From Macrostomum lignano (Eukaryota): DNA of 64,000 nucleotides. The DNA is taken from positions 186,001 through 250,000 of the forward strand of contig NIVC01001497.1 of the NCBI GenBank assembly GCA_002269645.1, in the 5' to 3' direction. Every line of letters begins with the position of its first letter. Position 1 is the stretch's first letter. The position numbers and the translations under genes are program-made. The notes beneath the pieces are model-generated. The model was given only the letters and a program-made list of their open reading frames with translations, ran no database searches and was not told where the DNA came from. Shown here in pieces: positions 6,313 to 19,800 of this stretch.

Positions 6313-11339
<5,027 letters not shown>

Positions 11340-11744
11340 GGTAACCACTAGCAGGTTTAGCTTAGGCTGGACGGAGACGGACAGTCGGCAGTAGCGAGCA
11401 GAGCGGAACGCTAGGCGAGAGGAGATTGAAGCGAGCTGCGGGGAGGGCGGAAGATTGGGGGGGGCGTTGTTAGGGAATTTCACCTAGCTCATAAATCATA
11501 GCGAAATCATAAATCATCGACTATTCTGTTCTATCTAGCCGTGTTGAAATGCTTTAGCACTAGACTGATTGATCAACTACATGCATAGGCAGGCGGCGAA
11601 GCAGACGCTGCTGTCTATGTACAAAATTGAGCGCAGCACTGGTTGACCAGCTTACTAAATAAGGATTTATTTTGTGGGAAGCTACGTTGTGGGAAAATAT
11701 GTTAGTCAATGCTGATTATTGGTTTACCACGATTGACTGCGGAA

Positions 11745-12642: not shown

Positions 12643-14085
12643 TCAGCTACTCAGGCACAAATCCAAGTGAACATTGATGTCGGACTCTGGCATTTGCCTG
12701 CTGCAAACTGGACAGCTGACCAGCTGCTGGCTGACTGCTCCTATGCTGGCGGCGCCACCGACGCCATTAAGAGTGCCACTGACGCCATTAGGAGCGCCAC
12801 CGACGCCCTTAGGACCGCCATCGACGCCATTAGAAGCGCCACCGAGGCCATTAGAAGCGCCACCGATGCCCTTAAGAGCGCCATCGACGCCATTAGGAGC
12901 GCCACCGATGCCATTAGGAGCGCCACCGACGCCCTTAAGAGCGCCACCGACGCGACTAAGAGCGCCACCGACGCCATTACCAGGGCCACCGACGTTGTTA
13001 TAGCTAGAGCTGCCACCGCTGCCGCCAAGTCGAATGCCGACACCAGGAAACGCGGCATCGGCGGTGCCGACGGCAGCAGACACGGCGGCGCTAACAGAGT
13101 CGGCAGAAGCGACGCAAACGGCGCCATCTGATTCAGCAATAGCAGGTCGCCAAGATTTCGACTCCACAGAACCTACAGAAGGATCTGGGCCGCTGCTAGC
13201 AGGCGAGGCGGGAATGAACTGCCGTATGTCCGTCTGTCCAGCAGCCGGCCGCTTCGCTGGCCGCTCCCGTTGCTCATCTTTGCCGCCGTCGGCAGCCCGA
13301 CTATTCTTCTTAGCCAACGGCTTCTTCTTATCGGCGAATCCTTCGGGCTCCTTGACTTTGACGAATCGGCCGCCGCAGTCGGCCTGATGACTGCGCCACC
13401 AGGTGTCGTTAGGCCCGGGCGCCCGGTTCATGGACCGGCGCACCCAGCCGTGGAATGGCGGCCGGTTCCGGCAGGGCCCCTCGCAGCGCCACCAGTGCTG
13501 CTTGTAGACGGCGACCTCGTCGTGAAAGCTGTGATAGACGGTGATGTTGGTGCCGGCAGCCGAGTTGATGCGGCGCATGTGCGCCAGAAACTGCGGCCCG
13601 TGCCCGTCACGGTCGCGATTATTGGCGGTGACAAACAGGTGCGCGTGAATCATCTCGTGCAGCAGGGTTTCGACTAAGTCGCGTCTGGGCCGCAGTTTGA
13701 GCAGCGGCTCGCTCAGTTTAATGCAGCAGAGGCCGCCGCGGCCCTCGTAGCAGCACAGGCCGGCGCACAGGGTCATGCGGGGGCTCCACTTCACCTCAAC
13801 TGCGACCAGGCTGCCGCCGAAGTAGCGCCCGTTGAAGTCCAGAAACAGGGCGTGCACATTGGGCGTGGGGTCCACCAGCTCCCAGTTGGGGTCCACTAGC
13901 GAGCCGCCCAACTCGTTGCTATTGGCAACGGCTGCCTTGCCTCTCTGCTTCGAGTCATCCTCCTCCTGCTCCTGGGAGGCCAGGCGCAGGCACAGCTCTC
14001 GGTCGGCCGCCTCCGACTGCTGCTCCTCCTGGCGGTCAAGCAGCTCGGCTTCCAGCTGCCACTGAAGCGCCTCTTCTGGGCTCCA
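12643..14085 (-). CDS. SPRTN: Spartan/SprT DNA-protein crosslink protease; single coding exon of 480 codons beginning at a splice acceptor, no genomic ATG
   Basis: SLVDPNWELVDPTP, HEMIH (HExxH), zinc-binding WWRCEGPC...HQADCGG, SHP box FPGVGIRLG, PIP-like QTDIRQFI, C-terminal UBZ4 CPVCSRQMPESDINVHLDLC. The frame is open to acceptor ctctctccaatctcttcag|TGG at 14085. Confidence 0.93.
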   Translation of the reverse strand, partial: WSPEEALQWQLEAELLDRQEEQQSEAADRELCLRLASQEQEEDDSKQRGKAAVANSNELGGSLVDPNWELVDPTPNVHALFLDFNGRYFGGSLVAVEVKWSPRMTLCAGLCCYEGRGGLCCIKLSEPLLKLRPRRDLVETLLHEMIHAHLFVTANNRDRDGHGPQFLAHMRRINSAAGTNITVYHSFHDEVAVYKQHWWRCEGPCRNRPPFHGWVRRSMNRAPGPNDTWWRSHQADCGGRFVKVKEPEGFADKKKPLAKKNSRAADGGKDEQRERPAKRPAAGQTDIRQFIPASPASSGPDPSVGSVESKSWRPAIAESDGAVCVASADSVSAAVSAAVGTADAAFPGVGIRLGGSGGSSSYNNVGGPGNGVGGALSRVGGALKGVGGAPNGIGGAPNGVDGALKGIGGASNGLGGASNGVDGGPKGVGGAPNGVSGTLNGVGGAASIGAVSQQLVSCPVCSRQMPESDINVHLDLCLSS

Positions 14086-14121
14086 CTGAAGAGATTGGAG
14101 AGAGATCTGGTTATGCGAAAC

Positions 14122-14343
14122 TGATAGTATGTAACTATGCTAGTATGTACCTATGATAGTATGTAACTATGCTAGTATGTACCTATGATAGTATGTAACT
14201 ATGCTAGTATGTACCTATGATAGTATGTAACTATGCTAGTATGTACCTATGCTAGTATGTAACTATGATAGTATGTACCTATGCTAGTATGTAACTATGA
14301 TAGTATGTAACTATGCTAGTATGTAACTATGCTAGTATGTAAG
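14122..14343. repeat. 16-bp minisatellite (TAGTATGTAACTATGC)
   Basis: About 14 copies immediately upstream of the SPRTN acceptor. Confidence 0.93.
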
Positions 14344-14363
14344 TATGCAATACCGCAATAGAC

Positions 14364-14663
14364 TAATAATAATTGATTACGCTTGCCCTAAAGGCCAGAT
14401 GTGCAACCGACAGCTCAGTCGCAGCTATCGCGCGGCGCATCTGAAGGCTGCGTACGGCTGTTCAGTCCAAGGACTGGGGGGTCGCCACACACACCCTCAA
14501 TTACCCCAGCCAATGCTGGCACCCATTTTACAGCTGTGTGAACAGAAGCAATGCAGAGTTAAGTGTCTTGCTCAAGGATACAAACTGTTCCAGTGGGATC
14601 AGGAATCGAACCCCCCACCTTCAAGTCGTGAGTCCGACGCTCTGACCACTAGGCTACAACCCC
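14364..14663 (-). mobile_element. tRNA-derived SINE family 1 (CORE-like), full-length copy
   Basis: Minus-strand A box TAGCCTAGTGG, B box GGTTCGATTCC, central CCTTGAGCAAGACACTTAAC...CTGTAAAATGGG, (ATT)n tail; three more copies in the window. Confidence 0.88.
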
Positions 14664-14818
14664 TAGTTGCATGACTGCGATAGACTGCAATAGACTGCAA
14701 TGCTGCAATATATCATTGCATCCAATACACCCTCATTAACTACCTCGATCAGCCTTTATTAACTTGTAACTTACGAATAAAAAATAAATATTGATAACAA
14801 TAACAATCGAGCTGCATA

Positions 14819-16127
14819 CGAGGGTCACTCAGAAAGTTCTTAGCCTGAACACGAAAACAGCAACAAATGAACTAAAAAACGACTACAAGTGCTCAAAATA
14901 CTCTCCACCGGCATTGATACAGGCTTGCATCCTGTGAAACCAGCTGTCGAAGCAATGCCGCCAATCCTCATCCCGGAGCTCCTCGATGATGTTTTTGAAC
15001 TCATTTACAGCTTCTTCCGGTGAAGAAAAAACCTGGCCCTTCAGAATCTCCTTGCACTTCGGAAACAGAAAAAAGTCGCACGGTGCCAGGTCTGGACTGT
15101 AAGCAGGGTGAGTCATCAGCTAACCCCACAGTCAGCCAGAAACTCCAGAGTTTGAGCCGCCGTGTGCGCGCTGGCGTTGTCGTGGTGCAGAAGCACCCCA
15201 CGCATTCCGCACCTTGGGCGCCTCTGGCTCACAGCAGAAAAGACTTTGGGCAGGCAAACCGTTGTGTACCAGTCAGCGGTGACTGTCTGGCGATCTTCAA
15301 GTGAAACGGAAGCCACATGCCCAGTGCGCATGAAGAAACAGGCCACCATCTGCTTGCCGACACTCCGGCTGCGTCGAAACTTTGTGGGGCTGTCCTCGTC
15401 TCCAAAGGTCCACATGGCTGACTGGCGCTTGCTTTCGGGGTCGTATTGATAAATCCAGGTCTCATCGCCCGTGAGGATGTCCCAGATACGCCGGCTGGTC
15501 CCGGATTCGAATTTCTGCAGCATGAATCGGCACCAAGCCACCCTGGTGTCCTTCTGCACGTCCGACAGCTGATGGGGGATCCACCGGGAAGCCAGCTTCC
15601 GCACTCCAAGGTGTTCGTGCAGAATGGCGTGCACACTCCCCGATCCAATACCGATCTCCTGCTGGATCTGCTGGTAGGTCACTCGCCGGTCAGCGGCAAT
15701 CATGCTGGACACAGCGCAGATATTTTCTGGAGTCACTGCGTCACAGGGTCTCCCGGATCGATGTTCATCTTCGAGGCTTTCTCGACCTCGGCGAAACTCA
15801 GCGAACCAGTTTTTGACGGTTGCGTATGAAGGACATACATGGGTGAAAACGTTCTGTAAAGTTTGATACGATTCGGCCGGCGACTTGCCTTGCTTGAAGT
15901 GCAAGTACATCATTGCTCTGAAGTCGCGATTTTCCAGCTTCATTGTTGAATTGAAGAACTCAGGGGTTGAACTGACTTTAACTCGCTGCAGTGGACTCAA
16001 AAGTGGCTGCTTCTGTTTGAAATTTTTGCTGCGATACTTTTAAAAGTTGGTCTTTACCATAGACAAATTTCATGCTTCTACGTCTCGTGGATCCTACTCA
16101 GGCTAAATACTTTCTGAGTGACCCTCG
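14819..16127 (-). mobile_element. Tc1/mariner DNA transposon (DD34D mariner), 1309 bp
   Basis: 30-bp TIRs CGAGGGTCACTCAGAAAGT(TC/AT)TTAGCCTGA with 2 mismatches, TA duplication at 14817-18 and 16128-29, internal transposase. Confidence 0.96.
14883..15943 (-). pseudogene. Mariner transposase with a single 1-nt frameshift near 15120
   Basis: MKLENRDFRAMM start at 15943; RWIPHQL, TGDETW, HDNA and HPAYSPDLAPCD motifs; restoring one base gives exactly 34 residues between the 2nd and 3rd Asp. Confidence 0.9.
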
Positions 16128-16374
16128 TACAGCATCTTGCGCTGAAATGCGGAAGACAAATGGCTATTTATATAATTTTTTAAACAGAACTAGCAGACAC
16201 ACTAAACTGGCGTACGCAAAAAATGCACAGATACAAATTGAAGCCAAAGAAGCTTAGATAAGATACAAAACTATCGAAAAAGATTCCGGCTGATCCTCCC
16301 AGATGGAGCCGCAGTCTAGCTCGATTGCTATCGTAAAATGAGTATGCTTTTTAAACTTCACGATATCTTCTCAA

Positions 16375-16897: not shown

Positions 16898-19800
16898 TCA
16901 CAGATTGTCCCATTCGATCAGCAGGAATCTCCGCTTGCTCAGCTTAATCAGCGAGGCGCCGCAGCCGGGCAGGACGCAGCTGTCGCGACTCAGCGGCGCG
17001 TCCAAAGCCGCTTTCGACTCCGCCGCCGACGTGTGACGCCGCAGATTCAGTGTGACCCGACCGGCGGACAATGCCTGATTCACCTGGTCAGGCGTCATCT
17101 GGCCGAGGCTTCCGTTGCCGCCATCCTCGGCTAGCAGGGACAGCAGCAGCTGGCGCAGACTGACGCCGTCGCGCCAAGCCAGGCGACGCCGACACGAGCT
17201 CAACCGGTCGCCGCCGCGGCTGGGACTTTCCGACAGCACGCCGGCGGCCAGGTCAGCCGGGGTCAGGCTGGCCAGGGCGGCGGAATCTTCGCCGAATAGT
17301 ATGCTGGTCCACTTGCGGGCCGCCGCCAGCCCGGCTTCTGGAGGGATTGGCATGGTTTGGGACTGAGATAAGAGACTGTGTACGTGGGGTGGGTAGGTTG
17401 GAGTGCGCATTGGGGTGGGGGTGGGTGGGTTGTAGTGTACATTGAGGTGGGTGTATATGGTGGGGTGGGTGGGTTGGAGTGCACATTGAGGTGGGTGTAT
17501 ATGGTGGGGTGGGTGGGTTGGAGTGTACATTGGGGTGGGCAGGTTGGAGTGCACATTGGGGTGGGTGGAGCTAGAGTGTATATGAAAGGGTGGCACCGTA
17601 CACTAATGTGATTACACAGACCGGGCCGCAGTATTAAGCGAATCCCTCCCAGCTCCCTCACCCCCATGCAGCAGCAATGTGACGCCATCGGCCAGCGTAG
17701 TCTGCGCCTCGTACCGCTCCGGCGCCGCTGCGTGTCGTTCGCAGAGTTCGGCCACCTGCCGATCACTTAAAAATGTGAATAGACGAAGCAAACGGCCCAC
17801 ATCGGCATCTGGCGTGTTGCGCAATCTCTGCAAAGCGGATAGAAAAAACAGGAGCCAGTCAGGTAACTTCTCAATGAACGTCTTAGAGTCACTCGCGTCG
17901 CCCCAGAGTCGCTTCAGATGACGCAGGTAAAATAGAAAAGGAGTGACTCTTAAGCGACTCTAAAACGAGATGTCACGGTACAAGTGGCCAAAAAATCGTT
18001 AGAGTCGCCCAAGAGTCAATTTGAGGTGTTTTGTTGTCCGCCACTCTGAAGCGACGATCTGGGGCGACGGTATGACGACTCTGGGGCCGTGGAGTCATAG
18101 TTGAGGCGTGTCAGAGCCCCTGCCTGTAGAGTCACAGAGTTGTGCATTTGAAGATCGAAGCGCATTTGCGTCGCATGATGAAGTTAAGTCACAGGTTTAG
18201 AAACACAGAACGATTCTTGGACGGCTCTTTCGCGACTCTTTTACAATTCTACAAATCACGTGACGCGCTTGTGACGCAATAGTCACCTCTCCGTCGCATT
18301 AGACGCGTTTGAGTCGCTAAAAAGTTACAAAACCCGGGATTTTTCAATGCCATTCACATTAATCAGCCTCGCACCTGGTAAAGCGCAAACGGTGAAGTTC
18401 GCTCGGAGCTCAGCCACACAGTGTCGGCCAGTTGGTCGCTTTTGCCCAGCTTCTGTCCATCGCTGGTGGTCAGCAGCGGCACGGTCAGACCGAAGGCGAG
18501 GACGCCTGACTGCTCGGAGCGGCGCAGGCAGGTCAGGCCGGTGTCGATGTTGCCGGTCTGGTCGTTGCCGCCGATCTGATAAATTGGATATATTTGAAAG
18601 ATATTTAAAGCTAGTAATTACCATACACGCCATGAACTTAAGATAGATTTAGGCACCAACCTGCACCAGACATCCGTAAGTTTTGTACAAGTGCAACCAA
18701 TCGTAGGCTTGGAACAGAGGATAGAGAAACTCCTTAACGCTCATGCCGTGCTTAGAATTCAGTCTAGTCTGCACTGAGTGCTTGCCTAGCAGATCGTGCA
18801 GCCGAGCGCCGCTTAGCTGACCGGAAAGAAATTCTGTGGCGCTCAAATTGGCATGCCAGGACTGGTTGTTGAGGACTCTGTGCAAGGGTTTTAATGAGTT
18901 GCAGAATAACAAATGCACACACAATATACACACAATAAGAAATTATTTATTGACTTAAACGTATTTGTTTTCGGAAGTTTTTTTCTATCCATATCTCAGT
19001 ACTTAATCATTATCCTAGCGTTCTATACTTATCTAGGAATTTTAATATTTATCCAGGTATTCCGATCTTTATCCTAGTAGTTCAATCTTTATCCGGGTAT
19101 TTTCAATATTTATCCAGGCATTTCAACCATTATCCAGGTACCGGTAGTTCAATCTTTATCCATGTAGTTCAATCTTTATCCAAGTAGTTCAATCTTTATC
19201 CAAGTATTAGTTCAATCTTTATCCAAGTAGTTCAATCTTTATCCGGGTATTTTCAATATTTATCCAGGCATTTCAACCATTATCCAGGTACCGGTAGTTC
19301 AATCTTTATCCATGTAGTTCAATCTTTATCCAAGTAGTTCAATCTTTATCCAAGTATTAGTTCAATCTTTATCCAAGTAGTTCAATCTTTATCCGGGTAT
19401 TTTCAATATTTATCCAGGCATTTCAACCATTATCCAGGTACCGGTAGTTCAATCTTTATCCATGTAGTTCAATCTTTATCCAAGTAGTTCAATCTTTATC
19501 CAAGTATTAGTTCAATCTTTATCCAAGTAGTTCAATCTTTATCCGGGTATTTTCAATATTTATCCAGGCATTTCAACCATTATCCAGGTACCGGTAGTTC
19601 AATCTTTATCCAAGTAGTTCAATCTTTATCCAAGTATTAGTTCAATCTTTATCCAAGTAGTTCAATCTTTATCCGGGTATTTTCAATATTTATCCAGGCA
19701 TTTCAACCTTTATCCAGGTAGTTCAATCTTTATCCAAGTAGTTCAATCTTTATCCAAGTAGTTCAATCTTTATCCAAGTAGTTCAATCTTTATCCAGGTA

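What the first reader, a model, noticed from the sequence alone, without database searches (positions are those of the whole stretch)
13776..14142. SPRTN has no genomic start codon; its ORF opens in phase 0 at a splice acceptor
Seen: the first in-frame ATG (13776) is inside the SprT domain and would remove the conserved SLVDPNWELVDPTP segment. The frame is open to ctctctccaatctcttcag|TGG (14085), with no ATG before the in-frame TAG at 14140-42. Upstream lie only a 16-bp array, a SINE, a mariner and the YARS2 3' region, and I found no phase-compatible ATG exon there. Inference: SL-AUG+TGG gives MWSPEEALQWQLEAELL..., so translation of this DNA-repair protease would depend on trans-splicing.
Basis: partly seen in the sequence, partly recalled or inferred. 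Interest (0 to 1): 0.78.

Follow-up and report, generated by a model that had tools for sequence, protein, structure and literature searches.

The report
SPRTN start codon supplied by trans-splicing
In the flatworm Macrostomum lignano the DNA-repair protease gene SPRTN has no start codon of its own and most likely borrows the AUG at the end of the spliced leader, a mechanism already known in flatworms, so this is a neat but ordinary new example.

Summary
The window is Macrostomum lignano contig NIVC01001497.1. The sequence facts hold. A 480-codon SPRTN ORF on the minus strand opens in phase 0 at ctcttcag|TGG (14085). An in-frame TAG lies at 14142-14140, and the first in-frame ATG (13776) lies inside the SprT domain.

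One claim is wrong. A phase-compatible ATG exon exists (15004-14921, inside the mariner), and GenBank's transcript-based model for this locus (PAA67284.1, 508 aa) splices it to 14085. Its donor is weak (CCT|GTATCA), it encodes out-of-frame transposase sequence, and the mariner is absent from the near-identical second copy. That copy's model is 5'-partial and begins just inside the ORF.

The M. lignano spliced leader ends in ATG, and the acceptor fits the published trans-splice motif. SL-AUG+TGG gives MWSPEE..., matching the genome-encoded MWS(D/L/E)EE start of trematode SPRTNs. SPRTN mRNAs of a fasciolid and an Echinococcus carry an SL just upstream of their start codon.

Best reading (about 0.75): the SL supplies the initiator AUG. 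No M. lignano read was seen. The mechanism has been known since 2006, so this is a new member of a known kind.

The parts
12643..14085 (-). Single-exon SPRTN (Spartan/DVC-1) ORF of 480 codons plus stop. It contains SprT-like domain (HEMIH), SPRTN zinc-binding domain and C-terminal UBZ-like CPVC...HLDLC. It has no genomic initiator ATG.
   Evidence: It is 100% identical to GenBank PAA67284.1 residues 29-508.
14086..14110 (-). 3' splice acceptor: pyrimidine tract (78% Y) ending CTTCAG| with AG at 14087-14086. Proposed SL trans-splice site. It is also the acceptor of the annotated cis intron.
   Evidence: It fits the [T/C]TNCAG trans-acceptor motif reported in PMC8629364.
14062..14067 (-). Second in-frame CTTCAG| followed by TGG (exon would start at 14061), 24 nt downstream. 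The upstream tract is poor (39% Y). It is a possible alternative trans-acceptor giving MWQLEAE...
   Evidence: The partial GenBank CDS of the second copy starts at the codon after this TGG.
14140..14142 (-). In-frame TAG that closes the frame 19 codons upstream of the acceptor, inside the 16-bp array.
13774..13776 (-). First in-frame genomic ATG (codon 104), inside the SprT-like domain.
14125..14348 (.). 16-bp tandem array of 14 copies in the outron. It is two units longer in the second copy.
14594..14663 (-). tRNA-like head of a SINE in the outron, present in both copies.
   Evidence: (Rfam tRNA 28.2 bits, gathering score 29).
14769..14774 (-). Consensus splice donor TTC|GTAAGT inside the outron, present in both copies. 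It is not phase-compatible with any upstream ATG and lies inside the annotated cis intron.
14817..16129 (-). Mos1-type mariner with 32-nt terminal inverted repeats, TA target duplication and a frameshifted transposase. It is inserted in the outron of this copy only.
   Evidence: There is a 1311-bp gap at an empty TA site in L001.
14921..15004 (-). Cis exon used by GenBank model PAA67284.1: ATG 15004-15002 directly after a TAA, 28 codons (MSSKTSSRSSGMRIGGIASTAGFTGCKP), out of frame with the transposase, weak donor CCT|GTATCA.
14086..14920 (-). Intron of the GenBank cis-spliced model (835 nt). In the trans-splicing reading it is part of the outron.
16898..16900 (-). Stop codon of the upstream same-strand tRNA-synt_1b gene (YARS2-like). 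The distance to the SPRTN acceptor is 2813 nt raw and at most 846 nt after subtracting the mariner and arrays.
11435..11436 (-). Acceptor junction (ccccgcag|CTC) of the downstream same-strand Peptidase_M3 gene. Together the three genes form a probable operon: YARS2-like, SPRTN, oligopeptidase.

Best explanation
SPRTN of Macrostomum lignano is the second gene of a polycistronic unit (YARS2-like, SPRTN, M3 oligopeptidase). Its pre-mRNA has an outron that ends at the acceptor ctcttcag| (AG 14087-14086). The 35-nt spliced leader CGGTCTCTTACTGCGAAGACTCAATTTATTGCATG is trans-spliced there. Its last three bases then become the initiator codon in phase with TGG, giving a 481-aa protein MWSPEEALQWQLEAELL... 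The genome therefore encodes the whole protein except its first codon. In this haplotype a recent mariner insertion placed a weak cryptic donor and an ATG into the outron. Some transcripts of this copy may therefore be cis-spliced to the same acceptor, adding 28 unrelated residues.

Shown: the ORF structure, the acceptor, the lack of a genomic ATG, the haplotype-specific mariner, N-terminal homology, and SL trans-splicing of orthologues.

Inferred: the SL junction at 14085 in M. lignano and use of its AUG.
For: 1. Identity: the window equals NIVC01001497.1 of M. lignano.
2. SL and acceptor: the species' single SL ends in ATG, 30% of its genes are trans-spliced, and the trans-acceptor motif is [T/C]TNCAG (PMC8629364). 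Here CTTCAG| follows a 78% pyrimidine tract.
3. Phase: the junction is phase 0, with no in-frame ATG between TAG 14142 and codon 104.
4. Where coding begins: homology to other SPRTNs begins within 7-12 residues of the acceptor. Residues 4-15 (EEALQWQLEAEL) form the N-terminal ALxLQ-type motif that sits 3-8 residues from the Met in other SPRTNs.
5. N-terminus: with the SL Met it reads MWSPEE. Trematode orthologues start MWSDEE, MWSLEE, MWSEDE or MWTDEE, with a genomic ATG in O. felineus. Among 356 homologues fetched, MW[ST] occurs only in 10 trematodes.
6. Orthologues:
 - A fasciolid RNA contig starts with the last 24 nt of the published Fasciola SL, joined 27 nt upstream of ATGTGGTCT, with the SL AUG in frame.
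 - An Echinococcus contig carries an SL-like leader ending GTATG at an AG| seen in four unspliced contigs.
7. Second copy: L001 is about 100% identical, lacks the mariner and has no consensus-donor ATG exon. Its GenBank model is 'partial', starts 27 nt inside the ORF and is gene 2 of a transcriptional unit. Such units are cut at SL and poly(A) signals.
8. Spacing: the repeat-adjusted distance to YARS2 is below the 1-kb operon threshold.
9. Precedent: SL-AUG initiation is established in flatworms (Cheng 2006, via PMC9851317 and PMC12582326). It is also noted for Macrostomum SLs (PMC10468722).
Against: - No M. lignano SL-containing read or transcript was available. Exact look-ups of the predicted products MWSPEE... 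and MWQLEA... found nothing.
- The transcript-based GenBank model of this very locus joins a cis ATG exon to 14085.
- The 5' ends of neighbouring partial GenBank CDSs lie 3-15 nt from acceptors, so they are imprecise. They leave 14085 and 14061 unresolved.
- A consensus donor (GTAAGT, 14774) sits in the presumed outron of both copies.
- The two copies are too similar for any test of selection.
- No other Macrostomum orthologue was found.
Confidence: 0.75

Rival explanations
1. The cis-spliced mariner exon is the real start for this copy. Transcription through the mariner uses the ATG at 15004 and the donor at 14921|14920, producing the 508-aa protein annotated as PAA67284.1. Trans-splicing is not needed at this locus.
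For: The GenBank model comes from a StringTie/TACO/TransDecoder pipeline built on RNA-seq and de novo transcripts. It has exactly this structure. The exon's ATG follows a stop, and the exon is phase-compatible. A donor placed in an outron can convert a trans-spliced gene to cis-splicing (Conrad 1993, as cited in PMC8629364).
Against: - The donor CCT|GTATCA does not fit the species' GT[G/A]AG consensus, and it skips a perfect GTAAGT 146 nt downstream.
- The 28 residues are out-of-frame transposase sequence with no family match.
- The mariner is absent from the otherwise identical second copy, so this cannot be the ancestral or general start.
- It buries the conserved MWS / ALxLQ N-terminus.
Confidence: 0.12
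2. The mRNA is not trans-spliced. It comes from its own promoter or is read through from YARS2, with an unspliced or non-coding 5' leader. Translation starts at a near-cognate codon (ATA 14130, ATC 14106, CTG 14055) or at the internal ATG 13776.
For: In-frame near-cognate codons exist. A consensus donor at 14774 could define a non-coding first exon.
Against: - Starting at ATG 13776 would delete part of the catalytic domain.
- A start upstream of 14085 would add array-derived residues with no homology.
- The second copy's model starts inside the ORF and not upstream.
- The orthologues are trans-spliced.
Confidence: 0.06
3. A distant cis exon supplies the ATG in both copies. It could lie upstream of or within YARS2, or elsewhere beyond the region compared.
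For: Sequence alone cannot exclude it. Many weak phase-0 ATG...GT candidates exist.
Against: No candidate has a consensus donor. The transcript-based model of the mariner-free copy has no upstream exon. Any such exon would push the conserved MWS N-terminus inward.
Confidence: 0.04
4. The locus is an untranslated pseudogene or processed copy.
For: It is a single-exon gene without a start codon.
Against: Both copies keep a 480-codon ORF with HExxH, the zinc-binding domain and the UBZ. No other M. lignano SPRTN appeared in the searches. The gene is transcribed according to the annotation.
Confidence: 0.03

Closest known systems
Schistosoma mansoni mRNAs that use the spliced leader's 3'-terminal AUG as initiator methionine (Cheng, Cohen, Ndegwa and Davis, J Biol Chem 2006; described in PMC9851317 and PMC12582326)
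   Same: A flatworm SL ending in AUG is joined in phase to an ORF that lacks its own start codon. The conserved N-terminus is restored only with the SL Met.
   Different: The species (a free-living macrostomorph) and the gene differ. Here the junction itself is inferred and was not sequenced. One haplotype also offers a transposon-derived cis alternative.
slORFs: ORFs created by SL addition (slORFfinder, PMC9851317)
   Same: The SL supplies the start codon of an in-frame ORF that shares its stop with the main ORF.
   Different: Here the SL-started ORF would be the only full-length ORF. It is not an alternative or extension of an annotated ORF.
SPRTN mRNA of a fasciolid trematode (Logan contig SRR5929441_22523, L004)
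   Same: It is the orthologous gene, SL-trans-spliced at the 5' end, with the SL AUG in frame and the same MWS...EE N-terminus.
   Different: The trematode keeps a genomic ATG before TGG. Its acceptor lies 27 nt upstream, so the SL AUG only adds 10 residues and is dispensable.
[quoted passage not shown] 1993, cited in PMC8629364)
   Same: A donor placed in the outron, here by the mariner, competes for the trans-splice acceptor.
   Different: This case is natural, specific to one haplotype, and uses a weak donor. The extent of conversion is unknown.
SPRTN / Spartan / DVC-1 DNA-protein-crosslink metalloprotease
   Same: It has the SprT-like HExxH domain, the SPRTN zinc-binding domain and a C-terminal UBZ-type zinc finger, at 55-70% identity to animal SPRTNs across the catalytic region.
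   Different: The C-terminal half carries a species-specific 7-residue (21-bp) tandem repeat. PIP and SHP motifs were not examined.

Membership tests
Flatworm mRNAs initiated at the spliced-leader AUG | The organism's SL ends in AUG at the splice donor. | tested here: met
   The published M. lignano SL is CGG...TTGCATG followed by GTAAG (PMC8629364). No SL gene lies in the window itself.
Flatworm mRNAs initiated at the spliced-leader AUG | The mRNA carries the SL joined at the acceptor that opens the ORF. | not testable with these tools
   No M. lignano reads or transcripts are held. The support is indirect: motif fit, the 5'-partial model of the second copy, and trans-spliced orthologues.
Flatworm mRNAs initiated at the spliced-leader AUG | The SL AUG is in frame with the conserved ORF. 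| tested here: met
   The exon starts in phase 0 at TGG 14085. The product MWSPEE aligns with trematode MWSxEE.
Flatworm mRNAs initiated at the spliced-leader AUG | No genomic in-frame AUG can give the full conserved protein. | tested here: inconclusive
   None lies in the exon upstream of codon 104, and none in the mariner-free copy has a consensus donor. This haplotype, however, has an annotated cis ATG exon.
Flatworm mRNAs initiated at the spliced-leader AUG | The protein's N-terminal Met derives from the SL. | not testable with these tools
   This needs N-terminal proteomics or ribosome profiling.
SPRTN/Spartan metalloprotease | SprT-like domain with an HExxH active site. | tested here: met
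   PF10263 E=1.6e-30, residues 78-185. HEMIH is present.
SPRTN/Spartan metalloprotease | Spartan zinc-binding domain after the protease domain. | tested here: met
   PF22934 E=6e-25, residues 196-243.
SPRTN/Spartan metalloprotease | C-terminal ubiquitin-binding zinc finger (UBZ). | tested here: inconclusive
   PF18279 scores 19 bits, below the 26.4-bit cut-off. The CPVC...HLDLC pattern is shared with the orthologues' C-termini.
M. lignano operon (polycistronic transcriptional unit) | Adjacent same-strand genes, the downstream one SL-trans-spliced, with a repeat-adjusted spacing under 1 kb. | tested here: inconclusive
   Same strand and at most 846 nt after subtracting repeats (threshold). The locus tags g2 and g3 indicate a multi-gene unit. 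The SL status itself was not seen.
Tc1/mariner (Mos1-like) DNA transposon | Terminal inverted repeats, TA target-site duplication and a DDE transposase with an HTH domain. | tested here: met
   32-nt terminal inverted repeats at 94% identity, TA on both sides and an empty TA site in L001, HTH_48 and Transposase_1 matches. The ORF is frameshifted.

The most novel reading that the evidence does not exclude
The ancestral flatworm SPRTN began MWSxEE from a genomic ATG downstream of a trans-splice acceptor, as in Fasciola. In the Macrostomum lineage the genomic start codon was lost, and the acceptor now abuts TGG. An essential genome-maintenance protease has thus handed its initiator codon entirely to the spliced leader. 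In one haplotype a young mariner insertion is now converting the outron into an intron with a transposon-derived start, a natural allele-specific version of the Conrad outron-to-intron experiment.
Probability: 0.35. Interest if true: 0.5.

Novelty: new member of a known kind. Interest (0 to 1): 0.33.

Why it matters
It matters mainly for annotation and for Macrostomum as a model organism.
- Both GenBank models of this gene have doubtful N-termini: one is 'partial' and the other carries a transposon-derived extension. A pipeline that trims the SL including its ATG will systematically miscall such genes.
- It gives a clear, testable case in which an important conserved protein depends on the SL for its start codon.
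- The pair of near-identical copies, with and without a mariner in the outron, would allow measurement of competition between cis- and trans-splicing at one acceptor.
- It does not reveal a new mechanism.

Tried and rejected
- Exact-product look-ups found nothing on record. The queries were MWSPEE... (481 aa), MWQLEA... (473 aa) and the bacterial-style TTG-start ORF. No M. lignano transcript contig could therefore be read.
- A homology search with only the N-terminal 99 residues returned nothing, not even the self hit. I take this as a limit of the word index.
- The HMMER search of cluster representatives found no other macrostomorph SPRTN.
- Searches for the locus tags in papers and supplements found nothing.
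- A literature search for the Echinococcus leader sequence hit only unrelated primers.
- Comparing the two copies for selection was uninformative, because coding and non-coding parts are both about 100% identical.
- I tried to use the start points of neighbouring partial GenBank CDSs to decide between acceptors 14085 and 14061. The offsets vary from 3 to 15 nt, so this was inconclusive.
- Rejected: internal ATG 13776 as the start, because it truncates the domain. Rejected: pseudogene, because the ORF is intact in both copies.

Full report
**What the window is**

L002, the GenBank contig NIVC01001497.1 of the Macrostomum lignano Mlig_3_7 assembly, matches window 25004-2643 at 100% over 22,362 bases. 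The best protein hits are two M. lignano entries:
- PAA54644.1 (P0001): 471 aa, flagged 'partial', locus tag Mlig032306g2.
- PAA67284.1 (P0121): 508 aa, locus tag Mlig002522g3.

The gene is a clear SPRTN/Spartan orthologue:
- SprT-like domain: E=1.6e-30, residues 78-185, with HEMIH.
- SPRTN zinc-binding domain: E=6e-25.
- A weak UBZ hit at the C-terminus.

It is 55-70% identical to animal SPRTNs over the catalytic part.

**Check of the observation**

These points hold on the minus strand:
- The frame is open from TGG at 14085 to the stop at 12645-12643 (480 codons).
- The bases before 14085 are ccagatctctctccaatctcttcag.
- The in-frame TAG is at 14142-14140, inside the 16-bp array.
- The first in-frame ATG is at 13776, codon 104, inside the SprT domain.

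- 16-bp array at 14125-14348.
- A SINE with a tRNA-like head at 14594-14663.
- A Mos1-type mariner at 14817-16129 with 32-nt terminal repeats and TA duplication.
- The YARS2-like stop at 16900-16898.

One statement is wrong. Phase-compatible ATG exons do exist: 160 trivial ATG...|GT candidates lie in the outron. One of them is actually annotated. The 28 N-terminal residues of PAA67284.1 (MSSKTSSRSSGMRIGGIASTAGFTGCKP) are encoded at window 15004-14921. This lies inside the 3' part of the mariner, directly after a TAA and out of frame with the transposase. The exon is joined through CCT|GTATCA to the acceptor at 14085.

**How much weight the cis exon carries**

The Mlig_3_7 annotation is transcript-based. 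It used StringTie/TACO on STAR alignments plus de novo transcripts. Transcriptional units were cut at SL and poly(A) signals by TBONE, and ORFs were called by TransDecoder (PMC5730564). The junction therefore probably reflects some real RNA.

Four things argue that it is not the normal start:
- The donor does not fit the species' GT[G/A]AG consensus, and it skips a perfect TTC|GTAAGT at 14774 that lies inside the annotated intron.
- The peptide is frameshifted transposase sequence with no family match.
- The second genomic copy (L001, NIVC01002876.1) is essentially 100% identical through the ORF, acceptor, array, SINE and flanks. It lacks the 1311-bp mariner at an empty TA site.
- In that copy no ATG exon with a consensus donor exists in the 1.5 kb back to YARS2. 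Its GenBank CDS is 5'-partial and starts at QLEAELL, 27 nt inside the ORF.

The insertion is thus very young and specific to one haplotype.

**Evidence that the protein starts at the acceptor**

HMMER alignments to other SPRTNs begin at query residues 7-28. Residues 4-15 (EEALQWQLEAEL) are a copy of the N-terminal ALxLQ-type motif. In other SPRTNs this motif sits 3-8 residues after the initiator Met.

Adding a Met in front of TGG gives MWSPEE.... Trematode SPRTNs start MWSDTE, MWSDEE, MWSLEE, MWSEDE or MWTDEE. In Opisthorchis felineus the ATG-TGG-TCT is genome-encoded.

By my estimate, a W-S pair at the first two codons after an acceptor has a chance probability of about 1e-3 or less. The missing codon is therefore a Met immediately 5' of TGG.

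**Where that Met can come from**

M. lignano has a single 35-nt spliced leader, CGGTCTCTTACTGCGAAGACTCAATTTATTGCATG, and 30% of its genes are trans-spliced. The enriched trans-acceptor motif is [T/C]TNCAG (PMC8629364). The site here is CTTCAG| after a 78% pyrimidine tract.

All flatworm SLs end in AUG. This AUG was shown in 2006 to serve as initiator methionine, and more than 40 S. mansoni cDNAs require it (Cheng et al., as described in PMC9851317 and PMC12582326). The Macrostomum genome paper also calls the SL's final ATG a likely start codon (PMC10468722).

SPRTN lies between a YARS2-like gene and an M3 oligopeptidase on the same strand. The repeat-adjusted spacing is at most 846 nt, below the 1-kb operon threshold of PMC8629364. 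The locus tags g2 and g3 mark it as an internal gene of a multi-gene transcriptional unit.

**Orthologues are trans-spliced**

- *Fasciolid.* The protein is 82% identical to that of Fasciolopsis buski. Its Logan RNA contig starts with CTCTGCCCTGTATATTAGTGCATG, the last 24 nt of the published Fasciola SL (PMC3795323). This is joined 27 nt upstream of ATGTGGTCT, so the SL AUG is in frame and gives MFTKDLISLA+MWSDEE.
- *Echinococcus.* The protein is 96% identical to that of E. multilocularis. One contig replaces the genomic sequence, exactly at ...ttttttag|, with a 30-nt leader ending ...CTTACCAGCAGTTGTGTATG. This resembles the published cestode SL. Four other contigs carry the unspliced upstream sequence. 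Calling this leader an SL is my inference.

SL addition just upstream of the SPRTN start is therefore conserved in parasitic flatworms.

**What remains open**

- I could not see any M. lignano read. Exact look-ups of the predicted products failed.
- A second in-frame CTTCAG|TGG lies 24 nt downstream, with the exon starting at 14061. The partial GenBank CDS starts at the codon after it. Neighbouring partial CDSs start 3-15 nt after their acceptors, so this does not decide between the two sites.
- The poor pyrimidine tract (39%) and the N-terminal homology favour 14085. Either site would depend on the SL AUG.
- The consensus donor at 14774 within the outron is unexplained.

**Verdict**

The sequence observation is correct apart from the missed cis exon. 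It is an instance of a mechanism known for two decades.

The new elements are modest. One is the particular gene. Another is the apparent replacement of an ancestral genomic ATG by the SL AUG. The third is a haplotype-specific mariner that offers a competing cis start at the same acceptor.

Noticed in passing
window 11337-11436 (minus strand); L001 12626-12629; L002 13570-13585: The downstream M3 oligopeptidase (thimet/neurolysin-like) gene has an acceptor ccccgcag|CTC in phase 0 with its ORF. An SL AUG joined there would add MLASISSRLAFRSARYCRLSVSVQPKLNLLVVT in front of the genomic MATTTTKK start. This Arg/Ser/Ala-rich extension looks like a mitochondrial presequence. Both GenBank CDSs are 5'-partial and start 3 or 15 nt after this AG.
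   Followed up: partly
window 14061-14091 (minus strand): The 9-mer CTTCAGTGG occurs twice, 24 nt apart and in frame. Two alternative trans-splice sites would therefore both give M-W-... N-termini (MWSPEE... and MWQLEA...).
   Followed up: partly
window 14769-14774 (minus strand); L001 9254: A perfect splice donor TTC|GTAAGT sits in the presumed outron of both copies, 690 nt upstream of the acceptor. It is out of phase with the nearby ATGs. Its role, if any, is unknown.
   Followed up: partly
L001 4201-4204: The GenBank CDS of the YARS2-like gene in the second copy starts at CGC immediately after a genomic ATG (ttttATG|CGC). No AG lies nearby, so its 5' end seems clipped by one to three bases. 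In the window's own contig no CDS is annotated for the YARS2-like gene in the 10 kb upstream of the annotated SPRTN CDS start at 15004.
   Followed up: no
window 12752-12994: The C-terminal half of SPRTN holds a 21-bp coding tandem repeat of 11.6 copies (GGAPNGV-like heptads). It carries the single Ser/Pro difference between the two genomic copies.
   Followed up: no
window 7630-9462: A long minisatellite reads as 560-610-aa repeat ORFs ([14 protein letters not shown]...) in two minus-strand frames. It lies within the span of the oligopeptidase gene and is presumably intronic.
   Followed up: no
L004 1-60; L009 1-45 versus L005-L008: SPRTN mRNAs of a fasciolid trematode and an Echinococcus species are SL-trans-spliced 27 nt and 14 nt upstream of their ATG. 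The SL AUG is in frame in the fasciolid (a 10-residue extension called by the gene finder) and out of frame in the cestode.
   Followed up: yes
window 14817-16129 versus L001 9208-9210: The mariner insertion is polymorphic between two otherwise about 100% identical copies (alleles or very recent duplicates). Its transposase is frameshifted near 15116.
   Followed up: yes
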